From Piromyces finnis finn (lineage: Eukaryota > Fungi > Neocallimastigomycota): DNA of 64,000 nucleotides. Made by a program: the position numbers and the translations under genes. The stretch covers positions 124,001-188,000 of the forward strand of contig MCFH01000011.1 of the NCBI GenBank assembly GCA_002104945.1, in the 5' to 3' direction. Positions within the stretch are counted from its first letter, which is position 1. Every line of letters starts with the position of its first letter. Shown piece by piece: positions 25,503 through 54,622 of the stretch. The notes under the pieces were generated by a model, which saw only the letters and a list, made by a program, of their open reading frames with translations, did no database searches and had not been told where the DNA came from.

Positions 25503-28265
25503 ATGATAAATTCAAATTTCATAAAAAAATATTTATTACTCATTTCTATCAATGTAATACTCATTAAAAATGTTTACTGTGAATATTACAGTTCTGACAA
25601 TAAAGTTGTAACCATTGAAAATATATATACAAATCTTTGCATAGCTTTTAAATCAAAGGATTATACAGCTAGACTTACTAATTGTAATAAAAGTGATTTA
25701 AAACAACAATGGATTGTACCAAAAAAAGGTAGTGGATATTATGTAAATAGATATAATACAAATATCTGTATTTACATAAAGGAAAATAAAGCAATTATTA
25801 CTAGTTTATGTTCAGAGTATAAAACTAATATGGGAGATATTTTAGTCTCAAAAAGTACAGAATCTCTTTGGACTCCTTCTGATTCTACTTTTTGTATGAG
25901 TATATTTGAAGATGATTTATCATTAATCAATGATGCTAGTGTTAGAAAAAATCCAACTATAAAGGTAAAAATGTATACTTGTAACGGTTCAAATTTGTAT
26001 CAACATTGGAAAATGAATACTATTTCTACTAATTATCCAGCAGTTACTACAAATACAAAAGTGTCAACAACAACGGTTACTCCATCTTCAACCCAAAGTG
26101 CTCGTTATACTCCATTATCAATGAATGAATCTGATAAACCATTAGATAATCCATACAGAGGATGGTTCCGTGGTGCTGTTACAGTTGATTTAAATGACTA
26201 TCCTGAACTTGACTGTAACTACATTAACAGATTCCATTCTGTTCGAAATTACAGAAATGGATTACAATATCTTGGTGTTAGATTAGCAGAATTTAAAGAT
26301 AGAAAAATTTCAAAGAAAGCTCTCGCTGCTTTAGACAATTTATTAAATGAATATAAAAAAAGAAAGGAAACCGTAGATCCAACAACTCAAATTATATTAA
26401 GATTTTATTATGATGGTGCAAATAATTGTAAAACAAAACCAAATTCTTTTGACCCTGTCATATCATTTATTGATGATGACAATGATTCAGATACCGACTC
26501 ATACAGTAAATTTAGTCAAATGGATGATGGATATTTATATGTTAATCATGAAGACCTTGAATACTTACAAGATAGATACAATCCAAATATTCTTTATTCA
26601 AATGAATCCTCTAAAAGTTCAATAAAAGCAAAGTCTAATACACAAGATAATGAAGCTACCGATAATGAAACTGAGAATACTCAAGTAATCGGATATCTTA
26701 ATGATGAAAATGATCTTGTTGTTCTTAATTTAAATAACGGAATGGGAAATACTAAACAAATTCAATTGAGTGAAGAAATGCAACAAAAATTAAGTTATAA
26801 AAGAAAACATTTCGGTAAACGTTTCCATAACAAAAATTATAAGAATGGTATTAAGGGTAAAGAATTAGAGGACTATCTTGAACATTCTGTTTTTATAAAT
26901 GACAAATTAAACAAAACTAAATTATTTGAAAACAATAAAAAATTGGGTAGGGCTGATGATAGTGAAGAATACATAATTAAAAATGCAACTATAAGTGATT
27001 TAAATAAATCTTATATTAATGTAGCCAAAGAACTTCAAGAAGTTGGATATTATCAATGTTTAGAATATTCACCAGATGATCCAAAAAAGTGTATTAGAAG
27101 TAAAAAAGTTAATACTTATTGTATATATCAAGTCAGTACTTATACTGGTTGTGAAATATATTCCACTTATGATATGGAACCAGAAAATGTAAATACAATC
27201 TTAATTCATATAACTCAATTATCAGACATTGTAAATAAATATAAGGACTTAGTATACATATATCAAGGTTCATTTGTCGGAACTTATGGTGAAATGCATC
27301 ATTCAAATTATCTTGATATTGATAATTTAACTCGTATTATGGATACTATTGAAAAAACGTTTGATCCATCGATATTTTTAAGTGTAAGAACACCTCGTTT
27401 TTACAGAGGTATTAAAAATTCATTTAATGTGATGCCAGGAGTTAATTATACATCTATCATAAATAGAATGGGATTATACAATGACGGTATGTTTTATAGT
27501 GAATCTGACTATGGTACCTATGGTAATTCAGATATTAGTGTTAACAATGGCTTTGTATCTGCCTATCGATCTCAGGAAGTTCAATTTCAAAACACTATAT
27601 GTTTAAATGTTCCAAATGGTGGTGAAGGTGTATTTAACAGAAATGTAAATGATGCCTATACAAATGTTTCTGATATCTCAAAAATTAATTCGCTATTAAC
27701 ATCCCCAGAAACATACATTAACTTTTATGTTTCTGAGGCCCATGCAAGAAATATTCATTTATCTTATTTAAACGATGAATATGACAAGGGATTATTTGAT
27801 CATTGGAACAAAACTTTAGCCAAGAATATTATTGGAACAAGTTGGAATGTTAATGGTGCTGATTATATTGCTAATCATTTAGGATATAGATATGTTATAA
27901 GAAGTAGTAAATTACTTTCTACTAATGTTTTAGATATTGTTATTGAAAATGTTGGTTACGCACCTGCCTATGTCTCCTTTAATACCAAGGTTTCATTAGT
28001 TTCAACATCACCTTCTCAAAATATAGAAATTAATATAAATTCTGATAATAAAAAATGGGGATTTATCAAGCAAGGAAATGAATATATTAAAACTGTTACT
28101 CTTTCCATTAATTTAACTAATTATTACTCAAATTTTAAAAGTAACAGTTATAATGTTTACTTTAACGTTCATGATCCAAGAACCGATGTTGATATTCAAT
28201 TAGGTAATACAAACACTTACTATGATGGTTTGGGCTATAGAGTTGGTATTCTTACTATTAGTTAA
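25503..28265 (+). CDS. Secreted putative glycoside hydrolase: signal peptide, ricin-B/CBM13-like lectin, Thr-rich linker, DUF4874/DUF4832-like catalytic region
   Basis: 920-aa intronless ORF with a hydrophobic N-terminus and C-x-...-QxW repeats (LKQQW, LYQHW). Motifs DNPYRGW, ILRFYYD, HITQL, SFVGTYGEMH, RMGLYNDG, SDYGTY, PNGGE, HLSYLN, HLGYRY and IENVGYAP match my recollection of DUF4874/DUF4832 proteins. Confidence 0.7.
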   Translation: MINSNFIKKYLLLISINVILIKNVYCEYYSSDNKVVTIENIYTNLCIAFKSKDYTARLTNCNKSDLKQQWIVPKKGSGYYVNRYNTNICIYIKENKAIITSLCSEYKTNMGDILVSKSTESLWTPSDSTFCMSIFEDDLSLINDASVRKNPTIKVKMYTCNGSNLYQHWKMNTISTNYPAVTTNTKVSTTTVTPSSTQSARYTPLSMNESDKPLDNPYRGWFRGAVTVDLNDYPELDCNYINRFHSVRNYRNGLQYLGVRLAEFKDRKISKKALAALDNLLNEYKKRKETVDPTTQIILRFYYDGANNCKTKPNSFDPVISFIDDDNDSDTDSYSKFSQMDDGYLYVNHEDLEYLQDRYNPNILYSNESSKSSIKAKSNTQDNEATDNETENTQVIGYLNDENDLVVLNLNNGMGNTKQIQLSEEMQQKLSYKRKHFGKRFHNKNYKNGIKGKELEDYLEHSVFINDKLNKTKLFENNKKLGRADDSEEYIIKNATISDLNKSYINVAKELQEVGYYQCLEYSPDDPKKCIRSKKVNTYCIYQVSTYTGCEIYSTYDMEPENVNTILIHITQLSDIVNKYKDLVYIYQGSFVGTYGEMHHSNYLDIDNLTRIMDTIEKTFDPSIFLSVRTPRFYRGIKNSFNVMPGVNYTSIINRMGLYNDGMFYSESDYGTYGNSDISVNNGFVSAYRSQEVQFQNTICLNVPNGGEGVFNRNVNDAYTNVSDISKINSLLTSPETYINFYVSEAHARNIHLSYLNDEYDKGLFDHWNKTLAKNIIGTSWNVNGADYIANHLGYRYVIRSSKLLSTNVLDIVIENVGYAPAYVSFNTKVSLVSTSPSQNIEININSDNKKWGFIKQGNEYIKTVTLSINLTNYYSNFKSNSYNVYFNVHDPRTDVDIQLGNTNTYYDGLGYRVGILTIS

Positions 28266-31800: not shown

Positions 31801-32501
31801 TATGGAAAAAAAATCTTTCTCTCTCTCTCTTCTTAAAAGTACTGGATAGAACAAAAATTGTTACGATGCTTTGTTTAAAGTTTCTTTTTTTTTTGAATTC
31901 TAGTTGCAAATTTTCTTTAAAAATTCTAGTTTTGGTTTGTTGTTAGTAAATTCGATTCGCTTTTTGACACTAAAATTGTTTGACTTTACTTTTCATTAAA
32001 TATTTAAATTGGTAAAAAATTTGAATCAAGAATGTCGACACCAGAAAGCTTGTAAATAGTATTTTTACATGATGTAGAGTGAATCAGTCTCTTACAAGAA
32101 ACAATACAACAATAGCTACATGAATATAAAAATACAATGCAAATGCTAAAGTTGACTACATTGGATTCTTACAAGAGAAGAGTAGTACTACATGAATACA
32201 TGAATAAAAGAAAAAAATACAGCAACAAAATGTATTACTCTTCTAATTAAATACTATACAAACTTACCTGAATATCAAACATTCAACTTATTCATCAAAT
32301 ACTTAAATTCGATGGATAAATGTTTTTTAATCGCTCAGTACCATGAGCTTAGTCCTAATAATTTTCCCTTAAAGACTAACCAAGCATCCATTGCGCAATG
32401 CTTGGATTTAATTCTTTCTACTCTCTCAGTACCATGAGCATGAGTAGACCCCCTTGAGAAACTACATTTATTAAATAAATGAAGGCACGTTCCCAAGAGG
32501 G
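28886..32501 (-). mobile_element. LINE copy H: intact 5' end (1 monomer) and ORF from ATG 31732 to mid-RT; 3' third missing
   Basis: Identity with the 1508-aa ORF stops at ...NDIFKE (28886), before the FADD motif. No poly(A). Confidence 0.92.
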
Positions 32502-35791: not shown

Positions 35792-35838
<47 letters not shown>

Positions 35839-36074: not shown

Positions 36075-39000
36075 TCATGGGACAAAATTATGATCTCCAT
36101 TGGTTGCGCTGGCCCTCCTGGCCTGTCTTACTGTTTCTTCAGCATTGACGCTCTTGGATGTTGCTTCAAACCTTTTGAACATTGACCATTGCTGGCCAAT
36201 AGCAAAAGGCATGATTTTGGTTAGAAGTTCCGCGGTTACCGTCAAGAATGGTGTTCCTTCATTAGTACCAGATTGAATCTGACGCTTACAAAGTTCTTTC
36301 CATTCCCTTGAATTGTAATTGATATTGTTAAAACTTCTTCCCCCAAGAAGGAATTTAAATATTTTACTGCACACACTAGAATAATCATACACATTAATAT
36401 TCACCGGATTATTAGAACTATTACTATCATTAACTAAATTACTATCTAAATTAGAATTATTATCTTCACTATTGCTATCATTACTAATATTATTATTTCT
36501 ATTACTACTATTGTTATTATTACTATTGTTACTATTACTATTGTTATTATTACTATTGTTACTATTACTATTAATATTATTACTATCTCTACTGATATTA
36601 TCAATTTCATTATTATTGATAGGACTATTGGAATTACGTTGACTGAAAAAATTTAATAGCTGGACTATGGAATCATAATGTTTAATACGGATATCTCTAA
36701 ATGTTGGACAATCTAATAACCAATGTTTAATACTTTGATCTCCACACTTGCAACATGGACAGTAGTTAGGACAAACTGGATCAACAAATTTGGCAGCTTT
36801 GGCAACTCTAGCATCCAACTTGTATCCGCTTCTTGCTTTCAATAGCCAGTAGAAGCCATAGGCAAACTCTGGGTACTCATAACATAATTTAATAAAATCT
36901 TTAGTATCAATAAACTTATTATCATCATAATATTGCGCTTTGATTGAATTCCCTTTGAGATCTTTCCAATAAAAGTTTTTAACTGCTTTAACATCTCCAT
37001 GTTTCTTTAGTTTTTTATCAAGTGTCCTACTTGATTTGCACCACGTGTATTTTCTAAATTTAGGAATGTAATTGACAAGGTATGAGATAATACAATTTGA
37101 GTTTTTCCATTTGTTAAAACATCTAACCTGAGCTAATGCACATTTGGCTGACAATGGAGGAATATTCAAATCTTTTGAAATAGAGTATAAAGATATAAAC
37201 GATACAGCTTTATGAACTCCGGCAACCCATCGTATTCCTTTGTTAACATGCTTCTGTGCAATACTAGACCTGGCTTTGTTGGATCCAAGTAATGGTGCAA
37301 AGTATGAAACTCTGCTAATCACTTGTGAGTTAAGTACTAGCTTTTTGAAGGGAATAGGAATATTAGGATTTCTTAAGAATTTACTGACTGAAAAAAGCCC
37401 TTTCAAAACCTTGTTATTAAGAGCTTTAATAACTGGTTTAAGGGACAGATTCTTATCAAATGGAACACCAAGATAAGTATAACAATCAGTAGTTGGAATG
37501 GGTTGTCCTGCTAAGTAAAATGTTGGATCTCTCTTGTTCTGATTTTCTATTGATTCAGGACGAATCACCATCGTTGAACACTTCTGGATACCAAATTCCA
37601 TTTCATTATACAAGGCCCATTCATTAACTCTTCTAAGCATCTTTTTTAAGCATCCTCTTGTTGGAGCACAAATAACTATATCATCTGCAAAAAGTCCACC
37701 ACAGCATCGAGTGTCACCTAAACTGACTCCGAGATCTTCACACTCTTTAAATATATCATTAATAAAGAGATTAAAGAGAATAGGAGAAAGAGGGCATCCT
37801 TGACGGACTCCTTTCTTCACATCAAAAGATTTCGAGAATTGTCCATCTAATTTGACATTAGCCTTAGATGTTAAATATAAATTTTTGATGAATTGTAAAC
37901 TCTTACCTCGGATTCCTAAACAATCTAATTTATGGAGAATATTACCGATTGGGACTGAATCGTATGCTTTCCTGAGATCTAAAAAGGCCAAATATGTCTC
38001 TTTATTATCTAATTGACGTCTACGGCATATTTCTTGGATTGAAATGAAAAGACTAATACTTTCTTCCTTTTTTCGAAAACCAAATTGTTCAGGTCTAATG
38101 AAATTATTCTTTAGACCATATTCTGAGATTCTAGTGGTGACAATTTTGGAAATCAACTTAATACCATTATTGATAAGTGATATACCTCGATAGTTATCAC
38201 AATCTGTCAAATCTCCCTTCTTAGGAATAGAAACAATACTGGATTCATTCCATGAGTTGGGGAAGTCTCCATCCCAAATACGGTTGAATAATTTAAGAAT
38301 AAAATTTAAACCATAAGCATCATTATCTGAAGTGGTATTACCGGAAGAATTATTATCTGTAGCATTATTAGAATCATTACTTGATGGAATTAATGCTTTG
38401 TAAAATTCAATTGGAATACCATCCGGACCTGATGCTTTATAATTTGGAGTAGAGAGGATAGCTGACTTGACTTCATCAATACTAATATCTTGGTTGATAT
38501 CCCATTCATCAAGCATAGGGAGTGAAAAACGTTTATTCGTTGGTTCTTCATACCAATGCTCCAAATCAAGACTTACGCCACTTGGATCTGATGCAAGATT
38601 TTCGAAATGATCATGCCACACATCTAGTTGTTCTTCCGTAGCAACAACTAATTCTCCATTTTTATTTTTAATTGGTTGAGCAATAAAGAAAGAATCTTTT
38701 CCAATTTTTGCAGTTTTCTTGATCCATTTCCAGGCCTTCTTAGGATTATGACTCTTCATATACTCACATCCTGTTTTAATCCAATGAAGATATTCTTGTT
38801 TCCTAAATTCATTACATCTTTTGTGGATGTAATCAATGAGCTTACGGTAGATTTTAATTCTTTTAATAAATTCATCTATATCATAAATTCTTTCTTTTTT
38901 AAATCTCTTATACAACTTCATTTTGATTTTTTGGAGATTAAAAATTTGTTGTGAAATATGAAATGAAGACTTTATAACATTATTTGCTGAGGTAATACTG

Positions 39001-40601
39001 AGCTCGTCTGCAATTGAAAAAGCAGTTGAAGTAAACTCTTTGGAAAGTTCATCTGTAGAAACATTAGGATCGTTGAATTTTGCTGAAAGTATTTGGAATT
39101 TATTATGACTGAGAATAGATTCCTTTTCCTCAATACATTTTAATCTATTCCATTTCAGAATTTTCTTAGGAACATTAAAGTCATTAGAAAAATCTTCCAT
39201 AGGAATAATTTTACCATTAATAAGAAGTGGCTTATGGTCTGATACAGGATAAAAATTATTTATAAATGATCCTGAGTGAATAAGATCTTTCATCTTCGAA
39301 TTGATAAGAGCATGGTCAATGTCGGAAGATTGATCACCTCGAGTCCAAGAGATAGTAGACCCTCTAAGCGGAAGAATTTCCCAATCTCCTAATCCATTAG
39401 TTGATAACCAGTTGGATAATTTTACTTTAGACATATTAAAATCACCAACAAGAATCGATGGATGGGATGAATGAGTTTGTAACCACAAGCGAACTTCTAA
39501 CTTTGCATGATCAACATAGATGTTGTGATGACTATGAGGCATATAAACATTTCCAATCGAGCATTTGAATCTATTCCAGAGACTAAAAGTATAAATAGAA
39601 ATAATATACTTTCCAGAGAAGTTTTCAAGTGAGGCTTGACACGAATTGTGAAAACCTAAATATAAACCTCTCATTCCCGGAACTGATTCGTCAGCTTTCT
39701 TGAAAAAGTGTCTATAGTTTCGCAAAGTAACACGACAAGGATAATCTGTATTCGATCCAGAACCATTACCAGTTTCTTGGAAACATAAGAATAATGGTTT
39801 GAAAATAGCTGTGAAATAGCTAATACTATCTCTCTTTTCATGATTCCACCCATTGGTGTTCCAACTAAGACAAAAAGAAAAGTTATCAGGCTTGTTGGAT
39901 GAGGAAGAATCGTTGCTATTATTATTATTATTAAAGTCATCGTTATTAATGGATGATGCATCAGAGGAATAAGTAGAACTATTACTAGATGGCTGTGAAA
40001 CTGAAGAACTATCAACTATTGAACTGTTATCAGAGTTGATAGAACTATTAGAATTAATTGTTGAATGTTGAGATTGAAATTGTGTTTGCTGTAGATCTGG
40101 AATATTTTCATGATGGGAAACTTGTTGAAGATCCTGTTGAAGATCTTGTTGAAGATCGGATTGTTGATGAGATTGTTGAACTGATTGTTGAACTGATTGT
40201 TGAAATGATTGTTGAATAGAATGTTGATGTTTATTAGAAACTAAAATTTTACGTTTGAGAGTGGAAAAAGTGTATTTGTGATTCCTTCTACTACGAGCTG
40301 AAAAGGAAATTGAGGTAACTGAAAGTTTCTTCTTTAACATGTGTAAGATTTTAATACAATCTTTTGATGAACCATGAACCTTGACTAAGAAAAAGTGATC
40401 ATTGAAAGTCTGAAAATATTTAACACTAATAACTGAATTAAATTTATCTTCTAGAATAACCTCGAGTTTTTCCCATAGCATATTTACTGACCATGATCGA
40501 ATACCACGGATAAAGAAGGAGCGAATATCATCTAAGGGGATACCATAAGACCGGGTACCACGTCTGATATAATTCTTATCTTTAATATAAAGGACTGACA
40601 T
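36075..40601 (-). CDS. LINE polyprotein: RRM-like N-terminus, APE endonuclease, reverse transcriptase, CCHC zinc motif
   Basis: APE motifs SWNTNG, FQETG, GNVYMP, LVGDFN, SDIDHALI and VSDHKP. RT motifs KASGPDGIP, NYRGISL, QFGFR, AFLDLRKAYDSV, GVRQGCPLSPILF, LFADD and YTYLG. C-terminal CPCCKC-x8-HWLLDC. Confidence 0.96.
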   Translation of the reverse strand: MSVLYIKDKNYIRRGTRSYGIPLDDIRSFFIRGIRSWSVNMLWEKLEVILEDKFNSVISVKYFQTFNDHFFLVKVHGSSKDCIKILHMLKKKLSVTSISFSARSRRNHKYTFSTLKRKILVSNKHQHSIQQSFQQSVQQSVQQSHQQSDLQQDLQQDLQQVSHHENIPDLQQTQFQSQHSTINSNSSINSDNSSIVDSSSVSQPSSNSSTYSSDASSINNDDFNNNNNSNDSSSSNKPDNFSFCLSWNTNGWNHEKRDSISYFTAIFKPLFLCFQETGNGSGSNTDYPCRVTLRNYRHFFKKADESVPGMRGLYLGFHNSCQASLENFSGKYIISIYTFSLWNRFKCSIGNVYMPHSHHNIYVDHAKLEVRLWLQTHSSHPSILVGDFNMSKVKLSNWLSTNGLGDWEILPLRGSTISWTRGDQSSDIDHALINSKMKDLIHSGSFINNFYPVSDHKPLLINGKIIPMEDFSNDFNVPKKILKWNRLKCIEEKESILSHNKFQILSAKFNDPNVSTDELSKEFTSTAFSIADELSITSANNVIKSSFHISQQIFNLQKIKMKLYKRFKKERIYDIDEFIKRIKIYRKLIDYIHKRCNEFRKQEYLHWIKTGCEYMKSHNPKKAWKWIKKTAKIGKDSFFIAQPIKNKNGELVVATEEQLDVWHDHFENLASDPSGVSLDLEHWYEEPTNKRFSLPMLDEWDINQDISIDEVKSAILSTPNYKASGPDGIPIEFYKALIPSSNDSNNATDNNSSGNTTSDNDAYGLNFILKLFNRIWDGDFPNSWNESSIVSIPKKGDLTDCDNYRGISLINNGIKLISKIVTTRISEYGLKNNFIRPEQFGFRKKEESISLFISIQEICRRRQLDNKETYLAFLDLRKAYDSVPIGNILHKLDCLGIRGKSLQFIKNLYLTSKANVKLDGQFSKSFDVKKGVRQGCPLSPILFNLFINDIFKECEDLGVSLGDTRCCGGLFADDIVICAPTRGCLKKMLRRVNEWALYNEMEFGIQKCSTMVIRPESIENQNKRDPTFYLAGQPIPTTDCYTYLGVPFDKNLSLKPVIKALNNKVLKGLFSVSKFLRNPNIPIPFKKLVLNSQVISRVSYFAPLLGSNKARSSIAQKHVNKGIRWVAGVHKAVSFISLYSISKDLNIPPLSAKCALAQVRCFNKWKNSNCIISYLVNYIPKFRKYTWCKSSRTLDKKLKKHGDVKAVKNFYWKDLKGNSIKAQYYDDNKFIDTKDFIKLCYEYPEFAYGFYWLLKARSGYKLDARVAKAAKFVDPVCPNYCPCCKCGDQSIKHWLLDCPTFRDIRIKHYDSIVQLLNFFSQRNSNSPINNNEIDNISRDSNNINSNSNNSNNNNSNSNNSNNNNSSNRNNNISNDSNSEDNNSNLDSNLVNDSNSSNNPVNINVYDYSSVCSKIFKFLLGGRSFNNINYNSREWKELCKRQIQSGTNEGTPFLTVTAELLTKIMPFAIGQQWSMFKRFEATSKSVNAEETVRQARRASATNGDHNFVP

Positions 40602-41245
40602 GATAATAATTCTAATTAAAAAATATTGAATATAAAATAAATACTAATAAAAATTACAAATATAACGTATATGGAAAAAAATCTGTCTCTCTCTCTCTTC
40701 TTAAAAGTACTGGATAGTACAAAAATTGTTACGATGCTTTGTTTAAAGTTTCTTTTTTTTGAATTCTAGTTGTAAATTTTCTTTAAAAATTCTAGTTTTG
40801 GTTTGTTGTTAGTAAATTCGATTCGCTTTTTGACACTAAACTTGTTTGACTTTACTTTTCATTAAATATTTAAATTGGTAAAAAATTTGAATCAAGAATG
40901 TCGACACCAGAAAGCTTGTGAATAGTATTTTTACATGATGTAGAGTGAATCAGTCTCTTACAAGAAACAATACAACAATAGCTACATGAATATAAAAGTA
41001 CAATGCAAATGCTAAAGTTGACTACATTGGATTCTTACAAGAGAAGAGTAGTACTACATGAATACATGAATAAAAGAAAAAATACAGCAACAAAATGTAT
41101 TACTCTTCTAATTAAATACTATACAAACTTACCTGAAAAATCAAACATTCACTTATTCATCAAATACTTAAATTTGATGAATAAAATGTTTTTTAATCGC
41201 TCAGTACCATGAGCTTAGTCCTAATAATTTTCCCTTGAAGACTAA

Positions 41246-41604
41246 CCAAGCATCCATTGCGCAATGCTTGGATTTAATTCTTTCTACTCTCTCAGTACCA
41301 TGAGCATGAGTAGACCCCCTTGAGAAATTACATTTATTAAATAAATGAAGGCACATTCCTAAGAGGGCACCAAGCATCCATTGCGCAATACTTGGATTTA
41401 ATTCTTTCTACTCTCTCAGTACCATGAGCATGAGTAGACCCCTTGAGAAACTACATTTATTAAATAAATGAAGGCACGTTCCCAAGAGGGCACCAAGCAT
41501 CCATTGCGCAATACTTGATTTATTCTTTTACTCTCTCAGTACATGAGCATGAGTAACCCTTGAGAAACTACATTTATTAAATAAATGAAGGCACGTTCCC
41601 AAGA
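41246..41604 (-). repeat. Three tandem 124-bp 5' monomers of copy E
   Basis: Unit starts (plus strand CCAAGCATCC) at 41246, 41370 and 41493. Confidence 0.93.
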
Positions 41605-41638
41605 ATGAGATAGATTGAAATTTTATTTATGCCTTCAA

Positions 41639-45312: not shown

Positions 45313-48300
45313 TTTTTTTTTTTTTTTTTTTTTTTTTTAACGGCATCAAATATTTTAAACTTTATTATTAATTAAATTAAAATTATAATACATGTAATAT
45401 AAAAATTAAAATAAAATAAAAATAAAAAAATATGTTTAAATAAACACAAATGAATAAAAATTGGGTATAATGTATTCTAGTAATTTTAATTAAAGTAAGA
45501 AAGCCACTATCATACTAAAGTATAATAATTGTATTTGACTTCCAATGGGACACCGAGCCAAAGATCAAAATTTTGTCATGGAACAAAATTATGATCTCCA
45601 TTGGTTGCGCTGGCCCTCCTGGCCTGTCTTACTGTTTCTTCAGCATTGACGCTCTTGGATGTTGCTTCAAACCTTTTGAACATTGTCCATTGCTGGCCAA
45701 TAGCAAAAGGCATGATTTTGGTTAGAAGTTCCGCGGTTACCGTCAAGAATGGTGTTCCTTCGTTAGTACCAGATTGAATCTGACGCTTACAAAGTTCTTT
45801 CCATTCCCTTGAATTGTAATTAATATTGTTAAAACTTCTTCCCCCAAGAAGGAATTTAAATATTTTACTGCACACACTAGAATAATCATACACATTAATA
45901 TTCACCGGATTATTAGAGCTATTACTATCATTAACTAAATTACTATTTAAATTAGAATTATTATCTTCACTATTGCTATCATTATAATATTATTATTTCT
46001 ATTACTACTATTGTTATTATTACTATTTTTACTATTACTATTGTTATTATTACTATTGTTATTATATATTGTTACTATTACTATTATGTTATTACTATCT
46101 CTACTGATATTATCAATTTCATTATTATTGATAGGACTATTGGAATTACGTTGACTGAAAAAATTTAATAGCTGGACTATAGAATCATAATGTTTAATAC
46201 GGATATCTCTAAATGTTGGACAATCTAATAACCAATGTTTAATACTTTGATCTCCACACTTGCAACATGGACAGTAGTTAGGACAAACTGGATCAACAAA
46301 TTTGGCAGCTTTGGCAACTCTAGCATCCAACTTATATCCGCTTCTTGCTTTCAATAGCCAGTAGAAGCCATAGGCAAACTCTGGGTATCATAACATAATT
46401 TGATAAAATCTTTAGTTTCAATAAATTTATTATCATCATAATATTGCGCTTTGATTGAATTCCCTTTGAGATCTTTCCAATAAAAGTTTTTAACTGCTTT
46501 AACATCTCCATGTTTCTTTAATTTTTTATCAAGTGTCCTACTTGATTTGCACCACGTGTATTTTCTAAATTTAGGAATGTAATTGACAAGGTGTGAGATA
46601 ATACAATTTGAGTTTTTCCATTTGTTAAAACATCTAACCTGAGCTAACGCACATTTGGCTGACAATGGAGGAATATTCAAATCTTTTGAATAGAGTATAA
46701 AGATATAAACGATACAGCTTTATGAACTCCGGCAACCCATCGTATTCCTTTGTTAACATGCTTCTGAGCAATCCTAGACCTAGCTTTGTTGGATCCAAGT
46801 AATGGTGCAAAGTATGAAACTCTGCTAATCACTTGTGAGTTAAGTACTAGCTTTTTGAAAGGAATAGGAATATTAGGATTTCTTAAGAATTTACTGACTG
46901 AGAAAAGTCCTTTCAAAACCTTGTTATTAAGAGCTTTAATTACTGGTTTAAGGGACAATTCTTATCAAATGGAACACCAAGATAAGTATAACAATCAGTA
47001 GTTGGAATGGGTTGTCCTGCTAAGTAAAATGTTGGATCTCTCTTGTTCTGATTTTCTATTGATTCAGGACGAATCACCATCGTTGAACATTTCTGGATAC
47101 CAAATTCCATTTCATTATACAGGCCCATTCATTAACTCTTCTAAGCATCTTTTTTAAGCATCCTCTTGTTGGAGCACAAATAACTATATCATCTGCAAAA
47201 AGTCCACCACAGCATCGAGTGTCACCTAAACTGACTCCGAGATCTTCGCACTCTCTAAATATATCATTAATAAAGAGATTAAAGAGAATAGGAGAAAGAG
47301 GGCATCCTTGACGGACTCCTTTCTTCACATCAAAAGATTTCGAGAATTGTCCATCTAATTTGACATTAGCCTTAGATGTTAAATATAAATTTTTGATAAA
47401 TTGTAAACTCTTACCTCGGATTCCTAAACAATCTAATTTATGGAGAATATTACCGATTGGGACTGAATCGTATGCTTTCCTGAGATCTAAAAAGGCCAAA
47501 TATGTCTCTTTATTATCTAATTGACGTCTACGGCATATTTCTTGGATTGAAATGAAAAGACTGATACTTTCTTCCTTTTTTCGAAAACCAAATTGTTCAG
47601 GTCTAATGAAATTATTCTTTAGACCATATTCTGAGATTCTAGTGGTGACAATTTTGGAAATCAACTTAATACCATTATTGATAAGTGATATACCTCGATA
47701 GTTATCACAATCTGTCAAATCTCCCTTCTTAGGAATAGAAACAATACTGGATTCATTCCATGAGTTGGGGAAATCTCCATCCCAAATACGGTTAAATAAT
47801 TTAAGAATAAAATTTAAACCATGAGCATCATTATCTGAAGTAGTATTACCAGAAGAATTATTATCTGTAGCATTATTAGAATCATTACTTGATGGAATTA
47901 ATGCTTTGTAAAATTCAATTGGAATACCATCCGGACCTGATGCTTTATAATTTGGAGTAGAGAGGATAGCTGACTTGACTTCATCAATACTAATATCTTG
48001 GTTGATATCCCACTCATCAAGCATAGGAAGTGAAAAACGTTTATTCATTGGTTCTTCATACCAATGCTCCAAATCAAGACTTACACCACTTGGATCTGAT
48101 GCAAGATTTTCGAAATGATCATGCCACACATCTAGTTGTTCTTCCGTAGCAACAACTAATTCTCCATTTTTATTTTTAATTGGTTGAGCAATAAAGAAAG
48201 AATCTTTTCCTATTTTTGCAGTTTTCTTGATCCATTTCCAGGCCTTCTTAGGATTATGACTCTTCATATACTCACATCCTGTTTTAATCCAATGAAGATA

Positions 48301-50992
48301 TTCTTGTTTCCTAAATTCATTACATCTTTTGTGGATGTAATCAATGAGCTTACGGTAGATTTTAATTCTTTTAATAAATTCATCTATATCATAAATTCTT
48401 TCTTTTTTAAATCTCTTATACAACTTCATTTTGATTTTTTGAAGATTAAAAATTTGTTGTGAAATATGAAATGAAGACTTTATAACATTATTTGCTGAGG
48501 TAATACTGAGCTCGTCTGCAATTGAAAAAGCAGTTGAAGTAAACTCTTTGGAAAGTTCATCTGTAGAAACATTAGGATCGTTGAATTTTGCTGAAAGTAT
48601 TTGGAATTTATTATGACTGAGAATAGATTCCTTTTCTTCAATACATTTTAATCTATTCCATTTCAGAATTTTCTTAGGAACATTAAAGTCATTAGAAAAA
48701 TCTTCCATAGGAATAATTTTACCATTAATAAGAAGTGGCTTATGGTCTGATACAGGATAAAAATTATTTATAAATGATCCTGAGTGAATAAGATCTTTCA
48801 TCTTCGAATTGATAAGAGCATGGTCAATGTCGGAAGATTGATCACCTCGAGTCCAAGAGATAGTCGACCCTCTAAGCGGAAGAATTTCCCAATCTCCTAA
48901 TCCATTAGTTGATAACCAGTTGGATAATTTTACTTTAGACATATTAAAATCACCAACAAGAATCGATGGATGGGATGAATGAGTTTGTAACCACAAGCGA
49001 ACTTCTAACTTTGCATGATCAACATAGATGTTGTGATGACTATGAGGCATATAAACATTTCCAATCGAGCATTTGAATCTATTCCAGAGACTAAAAGTAT
49101 AAATAGAAATAATATACTTTCCAGAGAAGTTTTCAAGTGAGGCTTGACATGAATTGTGAAAACCTAAATATAAACCTCTCATTCCCGGAACTGATTCGTC
49201 AGCTTTCTTGAAAAAGTGTCTATAGTTTCGCAAAGTAACACGACAAGGATAATCTGTATTCGATCCAGAACCATTACCAGTTTCTTGGAAACATAAAAAT
49301 AATGGTTTGAAAATAGCAGTGAAATAGCTAATACTATCTCTCTTTTCGTGATTCCACCCATTGGTGTTCCAACTAAGACAAAAAGAAAAGTTATCAGGCT
49401 TGTTGGATGAGGAAGAATCGTTGCTATTATTATTATAATTAAAGTCATCGTTATTAATGGATGATGCATCAGAGGAATAAGTAGAACTATTACTAGATGG
49501 CTGTGAAACTGAAGAACTATCAACTATTGAACTGTTATCAGAGTTGATAGAACTATTAGAATTAATTGTTGAATGTTGAGATTGAAATTGTGTTTGCTGT
49601 AGATCTGGAATATTTTCATGATGGGAAACTTGTTGAAGATCTTGTTGAAGATCTTGTTGAAGATCGGATTGTTGATGAGATTGTTGAACTGATTGTTGAA
49701 ATGATTGTTGAATAGAATGTTGATGTTTATTAGAAACTAAAATTTTACGTTTGAGAGTGGAAAAAGTGTATTTGTGATTCCTTCTACTACGAGCTGAAAA
49801 GGAAATTGAGGTAACTGAAAGTTTCTTCTTTAACATGTGTAAGATTTTAATACAATCTTTTGATGAACCATGAACCTTGACTAAGAAAAAGTGATCATTG
49901 AAAGTCTGAAAATATTTAACACTAATAACTGAATTAAATTTATCTTCTAGAATAACCTCGAGTTTTTCCCATAGCATATTTACTGACCATGATCGAATAC
50001 CACGGATAAAGAAGGAGCGAATATCATCTAAGGGGATACCATAAGACCGGGTACCACGTCTGATATAATTCTTGTCTTTAATATAAAGGACTGACATGAT
50101 AATAAATTCTAATTAAAAATATTGAATATAAAATAAATACTAATAAAAATTATAAATATAACGTATATGGAAAAAAAATCTGTCTCTCTCTCTCTTCTTA
50201 AAAGTACTGGATAGAACAAAAATTGTTACGATGCTTTGTTTAAAGTTTCTTTTTTTTTGAATTCTAGTTGTAAATTTTCTTTAAAAATTCTAGTTTTGGT
50301 TTGTTGTTAGTAAATTCGATTCGCTTTTTGACACTAAAATTGTTTGACTTACTTTTCATTAAATATTTAAATTGGTAAAAAATTTGAATCAAGAATGTCG
50401 ACACCAGAAAGCTTGTGAATAGTATTTTTACATGATGTAGAGTGAATCAGTCTCTTACAAGAAACAATACAACAATAGCTACATGAATATAAAAATACAA
50501 TGCAAATGCTAAAGTTGACTACATTGGATTCTTACAAGAGAAGAGTAGTACTACATGAATACATGAATAAAAGAAAAAAATACAGCAACAAAATGTATTA
50601 CTCTTCTAATTAAATACTATACAAACTTACCTGAGTATCAAACATTCAACTTATTCATCAAATACTTAAATTCGATGAATAAAATGTTTTTTAATCGCTC
50701 AGTACCATGAGCTTAGTCCTAATAATTTTCCCTTGAAGACTAACCAAGCATCCATTGCGCAATGCTTGGATTTAATTCTTTCTACTCTCTCAGTACCATG
50801 AGCATGAGTAGACCCCCTTGAGAAATTACATTTATTAAATAAATGAAGGCACGTTCCTAAGAGGGCACCAAGCATCCATTGCGCAATACTTGGATTTAAT
50901 TCTTTCTACTCTCTCAGTACCATGAGCATGAGTAGACCCCCTTGAGAAACTACATTTATTAAATAAATGAAGGCACGTTCCCAAGAGGGTAT
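45313..50992 (-). mobile_element. LINE copy C: full-length (2 monomers, ATG 50097, stop 45576, poly(A) 26 nt) with several 1-bp indels in its 3' third
   Basis: ORF pieces 47074-50097, 46940-47128, 46677-46958, 46351-46680, 45947-46354 and 45576-45905 tile the 1508-aa protein. Monomers at 50744 and 50868. Confidence 0.94.
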
Positions 50993-52600
50993 CAGGCTTG
51001 TTGGATGAGGAAGAATCGTTGCTATTATTATTATTATTAAAGTCATCGTTATTAATGGATGATGCATCAGAGGAATAAGTAGAACTATTACTAGATGGCT
51101 GTGAAACTGAAGAACTATCAACTATTGAACTGTTATCAGAGTTGATAGAACTATTAGAATTAATTGTTGAATGTTGAGATTGAAATTGTGTTTGCTGTAG
51201 ATCTGGAATATTTTCATGATGGGAAACTTGTTGAAGATCCTGTTGAAGATCTCGTTGAAGATCGGATTGTTGATGAGATTGTTGAACTGATTGTTGAACT
51301 GATTGTTGAAATGATTGTTGAATAGAATGTTGATGTTTATTAGAAACTAAAATTTTACGTTTGAGAGTGGAAAAAGTGTATTTGTGATTCCTTCTACTAC
51401 GAGCTGAAAAGGAAATTGAGGTAACTGAAAGTTTCTTCTTTAACATGTGTAAGATTTTAATACAATCTTTTGATGAACCATGAACCTTGACTAAGAAAAA
51501 GTGATCATTGAAAGTTTGAAAATATTTAACACTAATAACTGAATTAAATTTATCTTCTAGAATAACCTCGAGTTTTTCCCATAGCATATTTACTGACCAT
51601 GATCGAATACCACGGATAAAGAAGGAGCGAATATCATCTAAGGGGATACCATAAGACCGGGTACCACGTCTGATATAATTCTTATCTTTAATATAAAGGA
51701 CTGACATGATAATAAATTCTAATTAAAAAATATTGAATATAAAATAAATACTAATAAAAATTACAAATATAACGTATATGGAAAAAAATCTGTCTCTCTC
51801 TCTCTTCTTAAAAGTACTGGATAGTACAAAAATTGTTACGATGCTTTGTTTAAAGTTTCTTATTTTTTGAATTCTAGTTGTAAATTTTCTTTAAAAATTC
51901 TAGTTTTGGTTTGTTGTTAGTAAATTCGATTCGCTTTTTGACACTAAACTTGTTTGACTTTACTTTTCATTAAATATTTAAATTGGTAAAAAATTTGAAT
52001 CAAGAATGTCGACACCAGAAAGCTTGTGAATAGTATTTTTACATGATGTAGAGTGAATCAGTCTCTTACAAGAAACAATACAACAATAGCTACATGAATA
52101 TAAAAGTACAATGCAAATGCTAAAGTTGACTACATTGGATTCTTACAAGAGAAGAGTAGTACTACATGAATACATGAATAAAAGAAAAAATACAGCAACA
52201 AAATGTATTACTCTTCTAATTAAATACTATACAAACTTACCTAAAAAATCAAACATTCACTTACTCATCAAATACTTAAATTTGATGAATAAAATGTTTT
52301 TTAATCGCTCAGTACCATGAGCTTAGTCCTAATAATTTTCCCTTGAAGACTAACCAAGCATCCATTGCGCAATGCTTGGATTTAATTCTTTCTACTCTCT
52401 CAGTACCATGAGCATGAGTAGACCCCCTTGAGAAATTACATTTATTAAATAAATGAAGGCACATTCCTAAGAGGGCACCAAGCATCCATTGCGCAATACT
52501 TGGATTTAATTCTTTCTACTCTCTCAGTACCATGAGCATGAGTAGACCCCCTTGAGAAACTACATTTATTAAATAAATGAAGGCACGTTCCCAAGAGGTA
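50990..52600 (-). mobile_element. LINE segment B: intact 5' end (2 monomers), 5'UTR and first ~240 codons, interrupted by copy C
   Basis: ATG at 51707. Identity ends at ...SSNKPD (50990). Monomers at 52354 and 52478. Carries E-type SNPs and the extra QQSV repeat. Confidence 0.93.
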
Positions 52601-52661
52601 TGCGCTGGCCCTCCTGGCCTGTCTTACTGTTTCTTCAGCATTGACACTCTTGGATGTTGCT
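52601..52661 (-). mobile_element. 61-bp internal LINE fragment (A) from the end of the ORF
   Basis: Matches the segment encoding ATSKSVNAEETVRQARRASA and is joined directly to the 5' monomer of B. Confidence 0.9.
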
Positions 52662-52684
52662 ATTATTAGCAATAATAAAAATAG

Positions 52685-52756
52685 TGGAGATATCGGGGAT
52701 CGAACCCGAGGCTTCTTGCATGCAAAGCAAGCACTCTACCACTGAGTTATATCCCC
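52685..52756 (-). tRNA. tRNA-Ala(UGC), intronless, 72 nt
   Basis: GGGGATATAACTCAGTGGTAGAGTGCTTGCTTTGCATGCAAGAAGCCTCGGGTTCGATCCCCGATATCTCCA folds as a full cloverleaf with the G3:U70 alanine identity pair, anticodon TGC and a TTCGA T-loop. A T5 terminator lies 3 nt downstream. Confidence 0.97.
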
Positions 52757-53266
52757 AGCTTACTTACAATTAAATAGCAAATATTACAAATACTTTATAC
52801 ATTTCTATCATTTACTTTTAAATTATATTATTTTTAAAGTTATATATCAAATAATTAAAGAAATGAATATTCAAATAATACACCACACCAATTATACAAA
52901 TAAATTAATAATTATATGTATATATATTAATTTTACACACAAAATAAAAAAACAAAGAATTCAATATTTTGTTTTAAATATAAATTTTATTTTTCAAAAA
53001 TTTGTATTTGTTTGATTTTTTGTTTTTTTTAATGTTTTTAATTTTTTCTCATTTTAATTTTATAGAGTTTTTTTTGGAAAAGACACACATATATATTATT
53101 ATATATTTTGTTTTGTTTGTAGATTAATTTCATTTTTCTATTATTTAACTTTTAAATAAACTAATTAAAAAAATTTCATTCAAAATTTTTTTACTTATTT
53201 CATTTAAAATGGGCAAACAAATTATTTTGTTGGGGTTAAAGTTGATAAATTTAACAATTAAGCAAT

Positions 53267-54622
53267 TTACTTCTTCTTACCAGCGGCAGACTTGTCAACC
53301 TTTTCGACAGCCTTGATAACACCGACAGCGACGGTTTGTCTCATATCACGAACGGCGAAACGACCGAGTGGTGGGTATTCGACGAAGGTTTCGACACAGA
53401 GTGGCTTGGATGGAATTAACTTAACCATAGCGGCATCACCAGACTTGATGAACTTTGGGTTTTCTTCAAGAACCTTACCAGAACGACGGTCCATCTTTTG
53501 TTGAATTTCAGCGAATCTGCAAGCAATGTGAGCAGTGTGACAATCGAGAACTGGAGAGTAACCGTTGGCAATTTGACCTGGGTGGTTAATGACGATAACT
53601 TGAGCAGTGAAGGAAGCAGCTTCCTTGGCTGGGTCTCTCTTGGAGTCAGAGCAGACGTTACCACGACGGATTTCCTTAACGGAAACGTTCTTAACGTTGA
53701 AACCGACGTTATCACCTGGAACACCTTCAGCAAGGGATTCGTGGTGCATTTCAACAGACTTAACTTCAGTGGTAACACCAGTTGGAGCGAAAGTAACAAC
53801 CATACCTGGCTTGATGACACCAGTTTCAACACGACCGACTGGAACAGTACCAATACCACCGATCTTGTAGACATCTTGAAGTGGAAGACGGAGTGGCTTA
53901 TCGACTGGACGAGCTGGTGGTTCGACGGAGTCAATAGCTTCTAATAAAGTCTTACCAGTGAAGGAACCGGCCTTGGTTTCCTTGTTCCATCCCTTGTACC
54001 ATGGCATGTTGGTAGTGGCTTCAATCATGTTATCACCGTGCCATCCGGAAATTGGAACGAATGGAACAGTCTTTGGGTTGTAACCAGTCTTCTTAAGGAA
54101 GGAGGAAACTTCCTTAACGATTTCCTTGAAACGGGATTCGGACCACTTGGCAGTATCCATCTTGTTAACAGCAACAATGATTTGACGGACACCAAGAGTG
54201 TAGGCAAGAAGAGCGTGTTCACGAGTTTGACCATCCTTGGAGATACCAGCTTCGAATTCACCAGTACCGGCAGCAATAATAAGAATAGCACAATCGGCTT
54301 GAGAAGTACCAGTAATCATGTTCTTGATGAAGTCACGGTGACCTGGGGCATCAATAACGGTAACGTAGTACTTTGGAGTTTCGAACTTCCAGAGGGCAAT
54401 ATCAATGGTAATACCTCTTTCACGTTCAGCCTTAAGTTTATCAAGAACCCAGGCGTACTTGAAGGAACCCTTACCAAGATCAGCAGATTCCTTTTCGAAC
54501 TTTTCAATGGTACGCTTGTCGATACCACCGCACTTGTAAATTAAGTGACCGGTAGTGGTAGACTTACCAGAATCGACGTGACCAATAACGACAACGTTAA
54601 CGTGAGTCTTTTCCTTACCCAT
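53267..54622 (-). CDS. TEF1: Translation elongation factor 1-alpha (eEF1A), intronless
   Basis: 451 aa, [23 protein letters not shown], with DAPGH and NKMD GTPase motifs and the opisthokont insertion [15 protein letters not shown]. Strong GC3 codon bias typical of a highly expressed gene. Confidence 0.98.

What the first reader, a model, noticed from the sequence alone, without database searches (positions are those of the whole stretch)
52354..52600. 124-bp LINE 5' monomer folds into a strand-specific multi-stem RNA with a candidate pseudoknot and compensatory changes
Sense-strand monomer: CCUCUUGGGAAC-GUGCC-UU-CAUUUAUUUAAUAAAUG-UA-GUUUCUCAAGGGG-GUCUACUC-AUG-CUCA-UGGUAC-UGAG-A-GAGUAGA-AAGAAUUAAAU-CCAAGYAU-UGCGCAAUGG-AUGCUUGG-UGC. 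Pairings seen: (1) a 12-bp stem, nt 1-12 with 39-51, one bulged C, enclosing a 7-bp AU hairpin; (2) UCUACUC/GAGUAGA topped by CUCA/UGAG; (3) CCAAGYAU/AUGCUUGG; (4) the unpaired GUGCC (13-17) can pair with the loop GGUAC (68-72) as a 5-bp pseudoknot. Outer and inner monomers of B and E differ at four sites and all keep pairing: C12-G39 to U12-A39 (double compensatory), G7.U44 to A7-U44, and U101.G116 to C101-G116. The inner monomer of C is an exception, with one C.A mismatch. Several G.U pairs mean the fold works only on the element's sense strand. The CUCA-UGGUAC-UGAG hairpin recurs once more just inside the 5'UTR. All four intact 5' ends (B, C, E, H) stop within about 3 nt of the monomer boundary. 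Established: several LINE clades (R2, RTE, L1Tc) carry 5' HDV-like ribozymes. Inference: this could be an undescribed self-cleaving or RT-binding RNA motif. By eye it does not match hammerhead, HDV, twister, pistol or hairpin cores.
Basis: partly seen in the sequence, partly recalled or inferred. Interest (0 to 1): 0.85.

Follow-up and report, generated by a model that had tools for sequence, protein, structure and literature searches.

The report
Folded RNA head of fungal LINE
A jumping gene (LINE) of an anaerobic gut fungus starts at its first base with a 124-base unit, repeated one to three times, whose RNA hairpins related elements keep with different letters; the fold is real and uncatalogued, but nothing shows that it cuts itself.

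Summary
Window 52352-52599 (minus strand) carries two tandem 124-nt units at the exact 5' tip of a LINE. Six more units sit on three other copies in the window. The sense RNA folds into a 13-bp terminal stem, an inner AU hairpin, a two-part hairpin with a UGGUAC loop, and a hairpin with a UGCGCA-centred loop. Sense folds at -40.8 kcal/mol (z -4.2), antisense at -26.3 (z -2.8).

The compensatory changes inside the window are real but too few to count: 27 of 500 shuffles do as well. The stronger evidence comes from diverged relatives in gut metagenomes (ORF N-terminus 42-46% identical). They start with the same architecture, keep the loops and change the stems by paired substitutions.

The pseudoknot is possible but not supported statistically. 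No Rfam family matches, and the fold does not have HDV-like topology. Three insertions with unrelated flanks inherited the same outer-plus-inner unit pair, so the internal junction passed through RNA uncut. That argues against obligatory self-cleavage.

Best reading: a non-catalytic, structured 5' leader module, probably doubling as a repeated internal promoter unit as in mouse L1 monomers or L1Tc Pr77. The scan already found this fold on other pieces of this genome, with the same conclusion.

The parts
52476..52599 (-). Outer (5'-most) 124-nt leader unit of copy E. The element's 5' end lies at 52598-52599.
   Evidence: model R1, 151.9 bits
52352..52475 (-). Inner 124-nt unit of copy E. It carries the variants A8, U13, A40 and C102.
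52587..52599 (-). 5' arm of the terminal stem P1. It pairs with 52547-52560 (13 bp, one bulged C, three G.U pairs).
52547..52560 (-). 3' arm of P1 (the G-run).
52582..52586 (-). Unpaired segment J (GUGCC), the 5' strand of the candidate pseudoknot.
   Evidence: The complementarity is present; the pairing is not demonstrated.
52563..52579 (-). Inner 7-bp A-U hairpin enclosed by P1.
52515..52546 (-). Hairpin 2: a 7-bp outer stem, an internal loop, a 4-bp inner stem and the hexaloop UGGUAC (52527-52532).
52478..52503 (-). Hairpin 3: an 8-9-bp stem whose loop holds the palindrome UGCGCA.
52263..52350 (-). Decayed, shorter unit at the start of the non-repeated 5'UTR. It keeps a P1-like stem and the CUCA-UGGUAC-UGAG hairpin.
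50742..50989 (-). Two units at the 5' end of copy C, which is inserted into the ORF of an older copy.
41244..41607 (-). Three units at the 5' end of copy B. The outermost (41491-41607) is degenerate.
32378..32501 (-). Single unit at the 5' end of a fourth copy. Its 5' part is outer-type and its 3' part is inner-type.
40602..41243 (-). Non-repeated 5'UTR ('tether') of copy B, between the units and the ORF start codon.
36075..40601 (-). Intact 1508-aa ORF of copy B, with AP-endonuclease and reverse-transcriptase domains. This is the LINE that the leader belongs to.
52684..52756 (-). tRNA-Ala(UGC) gene, 84 nt upstream of copy E and in the same orientation. A T5 terminator follows it.

Best explanation
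The 124-nt unit is the 5'-terminal leader module of an abundant LINE with AP-endonuclease and reverse-transcriptase domains, from an anaerobic gut fungus (Neocallimastigomycota).

Shown:
- The sense RNA forms a terminal stem that pairs the element's first bases (a C-run) with a G-run about 50 nt downstream.
- Two hairpins follow, and their loops (UGGUAC, UGCGCA) are conserved.
- In diverged subfamilies the stems are kept by compensatory substitutions, so selection acts on the RNA hairpins and the loops are the likely contact surfaces.

Inferred:
- Full-length copies start at the first base of the unit whatever DNA lies upstream. The unit must therefore also carry or define the internal promoter and start site. 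Its tandem repetition (one to three units, then a decayed unit and a tether) matches the architecture of mouse L1 promoter monomers and the dual DNA/RNA use of the first 77 nt of L1Tc.
- The RNA fold is non-catalytic. Its likely roles are to protect the 5' end and to offer loops for the element's own protein or for RNA-RNA contacts.
- The leader holds 25 upstream AUGs, so it may also serve non-scanning translation.
For: Thermodynamics and strand.
- Sense -40.8 kcal/mol (z -4.24) against antisense -26.3 (z -2.76).
- Sense is more stable than antisense in 10 of 10 leaders.
- Sense z is -2.6 to -5.4 in six leaders (about four independent subfamilies), while a 124-nt stretch further into the 5'UTR has z between -2.0 and +0.7.

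Conservation with covariation.
- W plus L002: RNAalifold recovers P1 and hairpin 2, with 4 pairs changed on both sides.
- Hairpin 3, W against L001: the loop GCGCAAUG is identical, 5 of 9 pairs changed on both sides, all cells pair, 3 of 500 shuffles reach this, and slid controls pair at 24-47%.
- Hexaloop hairpin N-R-G-U-(A/G)-C, six hairpins from five loci: 95.8% paired, all 4 pairs vary on both sides, 0 of 500 shuffles reach the covariation score.
- Inner hairpin, L004 against L008: U-A to C-G, with a U.G intermediate in L029.

Position.
- Every relative for which the 5' end was recovered begins with a C-run paired to a G-run.
- The boundary is fixed by unrelated flanks in L004, L008 and L031 and in the four window copies.

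Repetition.
- The window copies carry 1, 2, 2 and 3 units.
- A second subfamily (L032) is also tandem, and L003 has an internal duplication.

Transcription. Four RNA-type runs of the organism hold 56-66% of the sampled words of 51700-52760.

Precedents.
- L1Tc Pr77/L1TcRz (PMC3383444).
- Mouse L1 monomers and tether (PMC9022269 and PMC6454616).
- Protection of R2 RNA by 5' structure (PMC12222951).
Against: - The start site, the cap status and whether transcripts span the unit junction were therefore not observed here.
- Promoter activity is inferred only from the start position.
- About six independent subfamilies are available, and several hairpins were picked by eye, so there is ascertainment bias. 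The model built from the window units finds the relatives only near noise: L001 13.4 bits (E 0.076) and L002 9 bits (E 1).
- Three of the ten leaders tested (L016, L018, L035) are not unusually stable over 124 nt (z between -0.8 and +0.1), and L002 is only weakly so (z -1.9).
- The function of the conserved loops is unknown.
Confidence: 0.58

Rival explanations
1. The unit is a self-cleaving ribozyme of an undescribed class. It cuts at its own 5' boundary and frees the LINE RNA from upstream read-through transcripts, as HDV-like ribozymes do for R2, RTE and L1Tc and twister variants do for Perere-3.
For: - The 5' ends of four copies with unrelated flanks fall on the first base of the terminal stem.
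- A stable structure sits at the extreme 5' end, and the leader holds 25 upstream AUGs, which fits an uncapped RNA that is not translated by scanning.
- LINE 5' ribozymes are an established kind (PMC3185411, PMC3774820 and PMC8501958).
Against: - No Rfam ribozyme family matches, at E up to 10 in the window or E up to 1 in nine relatives.
- The topology is not HDV-like, and all parts of a twister would lie inside P1 (reasoned).
- The outer-plus-inner unit order, with identical diagnostic variants, is shared by copies E, C and B. The internal junction therefore survived as RNA at least three times, although the inner units keep all their pairs.
- A T5 terminator follows the tRNA and the element is rich in T-runs, so Pol III read-through is excluded.
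- An earlier follow-up in this scan also found no sign of cutting. That is a lead, not evidence.
Confidence: 0.07
2. The units are only DNA-level promoter repeats holding transcription-factor sites, and the RNA fold is incidental.
For: - The tandem, variable-number architecture with a tether resembles mouse L1 monomers.
- The loop of hairpin 3 holds ATTGCGCAAT, a perfect 10-bp palindrome of the bZIP type. GTAC cores recur.
- Under lenient criteria the background rate of GTAC falling in a 'hairpin loop' is already 19%.
Against: - Stem arms change while complementarity is kept and the loops stay constant. Factor half-sites would be conserved in sequence, not in complementarity.
- There are nine or more G.U pairs on the sense strand against one C.A. 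Sense is more stable than antisense in 10 of 10 leaders.
Confidence: 0.12
3. The conserved self-complementary loops (GUAC in hairpin 2, UGCGCA in hairpin 3) are kissing-loop contacts. They would either dimerise two LINE RNAs or form the intramolecular J-loop pseudoknot. A dimer could also let the reverse transcriptase jump between leaders, which would generate the tandem units.
For: - Both apical loops contain palindromes that relatives conserve.
- Segment J keeps the form GU(A/G)C(C/U) directly after the P1 5' arm in five subfamilies and is complementary to a hexaloop in each (duplexes of -3.2 to -5.6 kcal/mol).
- Tandem leader units arose in at least two subfamilies.
Against: - Complementarity follows automatically from a shared palindromic core.
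- The only covarying pair has a chance expectation of about 0.24 over five lineages (my calculation).
- The hairpin-2 loops of L002 (GGUGC) and L001 (GUGCGG) contain no palindrome.
- RNA dimerisation is not known for LINEs.
Confidence: 0.1

Closest known systems
Mouse L1 (L1Md) 5'UTR monomers and tether
   Same: Tandem repeat units lie at the extreme 5' end of a LINE. Their number varies between copies (one to three here). A non-repeated tether separates them from the ORF (PMC9022269 and PMC6454616).
   Different: The unit is 124 nt rather than about 200 bp. Copies start exactly at a unit boundary. The unit is a strongly folded RNA with covarying stems, which is not a defining property of L1Md monomers. 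Promoter activity was not tested here.
L1Tc Pr77 / L1TcRz (Trypanosoma cruzi)
   Same: The first tens of nucleotides of a LINE serve both as an internal promoter (DNA) and as a folded RNA at the mRNA 5' end (PMC3383444 and PMC3185411).
   Different: L1TcRz is an HDV-like ribozyme. The fungal unit has neither that topology nor any Rfam match, it is repeated in tandem, and its internal junctions are inherited uncut.
HDV-like ribozymes of R2 and RTE LINEs; twister variants of Perere-3
   Same: A structured RNA begins at the element's first nucleotide, and the 5' end is independent of the flanking sequence (PMC3774820 and PMC8501958).
   Different: Defining features are not met; see the membership test. 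There is no evidence of cleavage.
Stabilising 5' structures on R2 template RNAs
   Same: A stable fold at the 5' tip can protect the template from 5'-3' decay and can influence how the 5' junction forms (PMC12222951; PMC11331408).
   Different: The role here is inferred only. The family and the host differ.

Membership tests
HDV-like self-cleaving ribozyme | Nested double pseudoknot: the P2 5' strand lies between the P1 5' strand and P3, and the P2 3' strand follows P4. | tested here: not met
   The only candidate long-range pairing (GUGCC with GGUAC) puts its 3' strand inside the loop of hairpin 2. No strand lies between the lower and upper parts of the terminal stem.
HDV-like self-cleaving ribozyme | A P1 of about 7 bp that starts at +1 with a G.U pair, plus a match to Rfam HDV-type models. 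| tested here: not met
   Nucleotide +1 is C, in a 13-bp stem. No Rfam match at E up to 10, and none in nine relatives at E up to 1. The descriptor features are recalled from memory; the Rfam scan is the test.
Hammerhead, twister, twister-sister, pistol, hatchet and hairpin ribozymes | A match to the family covariance model. | tested here: not met
   cmscan against 4227 Rfam families found only the tRNA and chance-level hits.
Any self-cleaving ribozyme | Site-specific cleavage of the transcript. | not testable with these tools
   Indirect evidence is against obligatory cleavage: uncut internal junctions were inherited in copies E, C and B.
LINE 5' promoter monomers (mouse L1 type) | Tandem units at the 5' end, with copy number varying between copies, followed by a non-repeated tether. 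| tested here: met
   The copies carry 1, 2, 2 and 3 units. A decayed unit and then a 642-nt tether follow.
LINE 5' promoter monomers (mouse L1 type) | Each unit has promoter activity. | not testable with these tools
   There is only the inference from the start position next to unrelated flanks, and the stretch's presence in RNA-run assemblies.
Conserved structured RNA element (Rfam-style family) | A secondary structure supported by covariation in independent homologues. | tested here: met
   with caveats: few lineages, and the hairpins were chosen by eye.
Pseudoknotted RNA (J with the hairpin-2 loop) | Covariation or probing support for the long-range helix. | tested here: inconclusive
   It never varies inside the window. 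Across subfamilies all combinations pair, but the chance expectation is about 0.24.

The most novel reading that the evidence does not exclude
The leader is an RNA with an activity of its own. Either it is a new class of self-cleaving ribozyme whose cutting is context-dependent (only the outermost unit), or it is a retrovirus-like kissing-loop dimerisation signal for a LINE, whose RNA-RNA contacts also drive template jumps that create the tandem units.
Probability: 0.12. Interest if true: 0.85.

Novelty: new variant of a known kind. Interest (0 to 1): 0.5.

Why it matters
How LINEs define, protect and complete their 5' ends is a weak spot in what is known about retrotransposition. The known answers are internal promoters, promoter monomers, and HDV-like or twister ribozymes.

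This abundant fungal family offers a compact leader that:
- starts exactly at the element's first base;
- has conserved loops on covarying stems;
- has been amplified in tandem more than once.

It is a tractable candidate for a new cis-acting RNA element, whether for protein recognition, 5' protection or non-scanning translation. It is also a rare case of monomer-type 5' ends outside rodent L1. Transposable elements of anaerobic gut fungi are almost undescribed: in the held library, the searches on Neocallimastigomycota or Piromyces with retrotransposon terms listed no paper whose title or abstract describes LINEs of these fungi.

Tried and rejected
- First guess: Dictyostelium TRE3, from the AT-rich DNA and the position downstream of a tRNA gene. 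Rejected. The ORF relatives come from gut and rumen metagenomes and from Orpinomyces, and earlier notes of the scan name Piromyces finnis.
- Model R1, built from the eight window units, finds the relatives only near noise. It was too sequence-specific to serve as a test of homology.
- MAFFT misaligns the outer stem of hairpin 2 in L002 by one register. Counts for that stem were therefore taken per sequence.
- A protein search with the first 240 aa found nothing.
- The exact 1508-aa product is not on record.
- Scans of genome contigs and viral contigs found no relatives.
No read-level 5' ends or junction-spanning reads were obtained.
- No letters of 53013-53049 were used as a query afterwards. 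The local scan of the whole window as a target with model R1 did cover them, and reported no match there.
- The lenient count of GTAC in hairpin loops (38% in leaders, 19% in background) was too permissive to be useful.
- The pseudoknot covariation was judged uninformative.
- An RNase P-type or tRNA-like reading of the terminal stem was considered and dropped, because the 3' arm is not followed by a free end.
- No tRNA gene lies in any of the 35 distinct related loci. These short contigs therefore do not show tRNA association for the relatives.

Full report
What is there

The window is AT-rich, 16-35% GC in 2-kb steps. Between about 28.8 and 52.6 kb it holds a pile of copies of one non-LTR retrotransposon, all on the minus strand.

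An intact copy (B) has this layout:
- a poly(A) tail, seen as a T-run at 35792-35835 on the plus strand;
- one ORF of 1508 aa (36075-40601). Its reverse-transcriptase domain is residues 792-1047; the AP-endonuclease domain is called at residues 241-452 of the sister copy's ORF, 47074-50097;
- a 642-nt non-repeated 5'UTR;
- 124-nt tandem units at the very 5' end.

The finding's coordinates cover the two units of copy E: 52476-52599 (outer) and 52352-52475 (inner). Other arrays lie at 50742-50989 (two units), 41244-41607 (three units, the outermost degenerate) and 32378-32501 (one unit).

A tRNA-Ala(UGC) gene lies 84 nt upstream of copy E in the same orientation and is followed by a T5 terminator.

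Which organism

My first guess was Dictyostelium TRE3, and it was wrong. The ORF's relatives (up to 70% identity) come from gut and rumen metagenomes, from fragmented NCBI assemblies, and from one Orpinomyces protein. The host is therefore an anaerobic gut fungus (Neocallimastigomycota). Earlier notes of this scan name Piromyces finnis; I did not verify the species.

Checking the observation

- a 13-bp terminal stem P1 (columns 1-13 with 40-53, one bulged C, three G.U pairs). It pairs the first bases of the unit with a G-run;
- a 7-bp A-U hairpin inside P1;
- hairpin 2: a 7-bp outer stem, an internal loop, a 4-bp inner stem and the hexaloop UGGUAC;
- hairpin 3: 8-9 bp, with a loop holding UGCGCA.

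The sense RNA folds at -40.8 kcal/mol (z -4.24; 0 of 200 shuffles as good). The antisense folds at -26.3 (z -2.76).

Inside the window the covariation argument is therefore weak.

The extra UGGUAC hairpin in the 5'UTR belongs to an 88-nt decayed unit (E about 0.01).

The 5' ends of copies E, C, B and the single-unit copy lie within 0-2 nt of the unit start, next to four unrelated flanks.

Evidence from relatives

I fetched 35 distinct related loci, L001 to L036, of which L007 is the same contig as L001. In those whose 5' end was recovered, the element again begins with a C-run that pairs with a G-run:
- L001, L002, L003/L032 and L004/L008/L031 have a long terminal stem;
- L016, L018 and L035 have a shorter local one.

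The boundary is fixed by unrelated flanks in L004, L008 and L031.

The first 124 nt are more stable on the sense strand than on the antisense strand in 10 of 10 leaders. Sense z-scores are -2.6 to -5.4 in six of them (about four independent subfamilies). A 124-nt stretch further into the UTR is not unusually structured, with z between -2.0 and +0.7.

The architecture is kept while the stem sequences change:
- In an alignment of window units with L002 (ORF N-terminus 45% identical), RNAalifold recovers P1 and hairpin 2, and 4 pairs changed on both sides.
- Hairpin 3 of the window against L001 has an identical loop GCGCAAUG. Five of its 9 pairs changed on both sides, 100% of cells pair, 3 of 500 shuffles reach this, and slid controls pair at 24-47%.
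- A hexaloop hairpin N-R-G-U-(A/G)-C occurs on five different stems: CUCA/UGAG, CCCA/UGGG, UCCU/AGGA (or GGGA in L004, closing with U.G), CUUC/GAAG, and L005's UCCU/UGGA, whose closing U.U does not pair. It pairs in 95.8% of cells, all 4 pairs vary on both sides, and 0 of 500 shuffles reach the covariation score. The caveat is that I chose these hairpins by eye.
- The inner hairpin of L004 against L008 shows U-A to C-G, with a U.G intermediate in L029.
- G.U pairs are common on the sense strand, nine or more. There is one C.A, in the inner unit of copy C.

This pattern of conserved loops on covarying stems with sense-strand wobble pairs is what a selected RNA structure looks like. Transcription-factor half-sites would not give it.

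Pseudoknot

The segment after the P1 5' arm reads GU(A/G)C(C/U) in five subfamilies, and it is complementary to a hexaloop in each. This is not evidence of pairing.
- Both partners share the self-complementary core GU(A/G)C.
- The A/G variation pairs with U either way.
- The one covarying pair (C-G in the window and L002, U-A in L004/L008 and L035, U.G in L001) would pair in three of four random pyrimidine-purine combinations. That is about 0.24 over five lineages.
- The helix never varies inside the window.

The pseudoknot stays possible. A kissing dimer, or two copies of one protein-binding motif, would explain the same letters.

Ribozyme

Rfam 15 gives only the tRNA at gathering thresholds. 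It gives nothing relevant at E up to 10 over 51600-52800, or at E up to 1 over nine related loci.

The fold does not have HDV-like topology: the P2 3' strand would lie in a loop, no P2 strand lies between the P1 and P3 equivalents, and +1 is C in a 13-bp stem. In a twister fold, all parts would lie inside P1.

The most telling argument comes from the window itself. Copies E, C and B have unrelated 5' flanks. All three carry an outer-type unit (G8, C13, G40, U102) followed by an inner-type unit (A8, A40, C102; position 13 is U in copies B and E and C in copy C). The two-unit arrangement was therefore inherited through RNA, and the internal junction was not cut, although the inner units keep all their pairs. 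Cleavage, if any, is not obligatory.

Pol III read-through from the tRNA is excluded by the T5 terminator and by many T-runs in the element.

Best reading

This is a non-catalytic, structured 5' leader module. The conserved RNA fold at the exact 5' tip is shown. The other steps are inferred.
- Copies start at the unit's first base whatever lies upstream, so the unit must also define the internal promoter and start site. Its tandem, variable-number arrangement followed by a tether parallels mouse L1 monomers (PMC9022269 and PMC6454616) and the dual promoter/RNA use of the first 77 nt of L1Tc (PMC3383444).
- Tandem leader units occur in a second subfamily (L032), and L003 has an internal duplication. 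Amplification of the 5' module is therefore recurrent.
- A stable 5' fold can protect a LINE RNA from decay (PMC12222951).
- The 1006-nt leader of copy B holds 25 upstream AUGs, which argues against simple scanning.

Four RNA-type runs of the organism hold 56-66% of the sampled words of 51700-52760. This is weak evidence of transcription.

Earlier findings of the scan

The same 124-nt fold was noted on other pieces of this genome. Two follow-ups (s1-182122, s1-182138) reached the same conclusion: the fold is real and uncatalogued, and there is no sign of self-cutting. I reached this from my own loci and tests. What I add is the inheritance argument against obligatory cleavage, the formal counts for hairpin 3 and the hexaloop hairpin, and the showing that the pseudoknot statistic is uninformative.

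Verdict

It is a new variant of a known kind (LINE 5' leader or monomer modules). Interest is about 0.5.

Noticed in passing
window 28800-52756: At least five or six copies of the LINE are stacked or nested in one orientation, starting 84 nt downstream of a tRNA-Ala gene. Two copies begin 36 and 66 nt after the poly(A) tail of the copy upstream of them, and one sits inside another copy's ORF. No tRNA gene lies in any of the 35 distinct related metagenome loci, but their flanks are short.
   Followed up: partly
window 40602-41607 (minus): The 1006-nt leader of copy B contains 25 upstream AUGs, five per unit. The units contain no T4+ runs. Simple cap-dependent scanning to the ORF start looks unlikely.
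   Followed up: partly
window 52041-52072 (minus); also L001-L004, L008, L016, L018 and L035 5'UTRs: The best-conserved primary sequence of the 5'UTR across subfamilies is a block TTGTAAGAG-N-TGATTCACTC. It holds an AP-1/GCN4-like TGATTCA core between inverted arms. Repeated (C/T)(A/T)TGTA(A/G) motifs precede it.
   Followed up: no
L032:1-230 and L003:83-190: In a different subfamily the leader is flanked on both sides by the same 55 nt or so, which indicates a tandem unit of about 130-140 nt. L003 has a duplication of about 50 nt inside its terminal stem. The 5' module has therefore been amplified independently.
   Followed up: partly
window 32378-32501 (minus): The single-unit copy is a chimera. 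Its 5' part is outer-type (G8, C13, G40) and its 3' part inner-type (C102, inner-type junction to the tether). A deletion or template slip between two units would give this.
   Followed up: no
window 41491-41607 (minus): The outermost, third unit of copy B is much more decayed than its neighbours: about nine changes including deletions, the hexaloop shortened to UGUAC, and P1 weakened.
   Followed up: no
window 52600-52619 (minus): The spacer between the tRNA gene and the element ends in a GC-rich inverted repeat, GGCC-AGGAG-GGCC, which is unusual for this AT-rich DNA.
   Followed up: no
L005:1320, L006:841, L013:28, L023:797, L024:542, L026:900, L027:1046: A hairpin with a (A/G)CAGUAC loop on two different stems (CAAUA/UAUUG and UCAA/UUGA) recurs inside the ORF of several subfamilies. 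It may be a coding coincidence.
   Followed up: no
window 53267-54622 (minus) and 25503-28265 (plus): An intronless EF-1-alpha-type ORF lies just upstream of the tRNA gene. A 920-aa ORF with ricin-lectin (below Pfam's cut-off), DUF4874 and DUF4832 domains borders the LINE pile on the other side.
   Followed up: no
None of their letters was used as a query afterwards. They were covered only as a local target.
   Followed up: no
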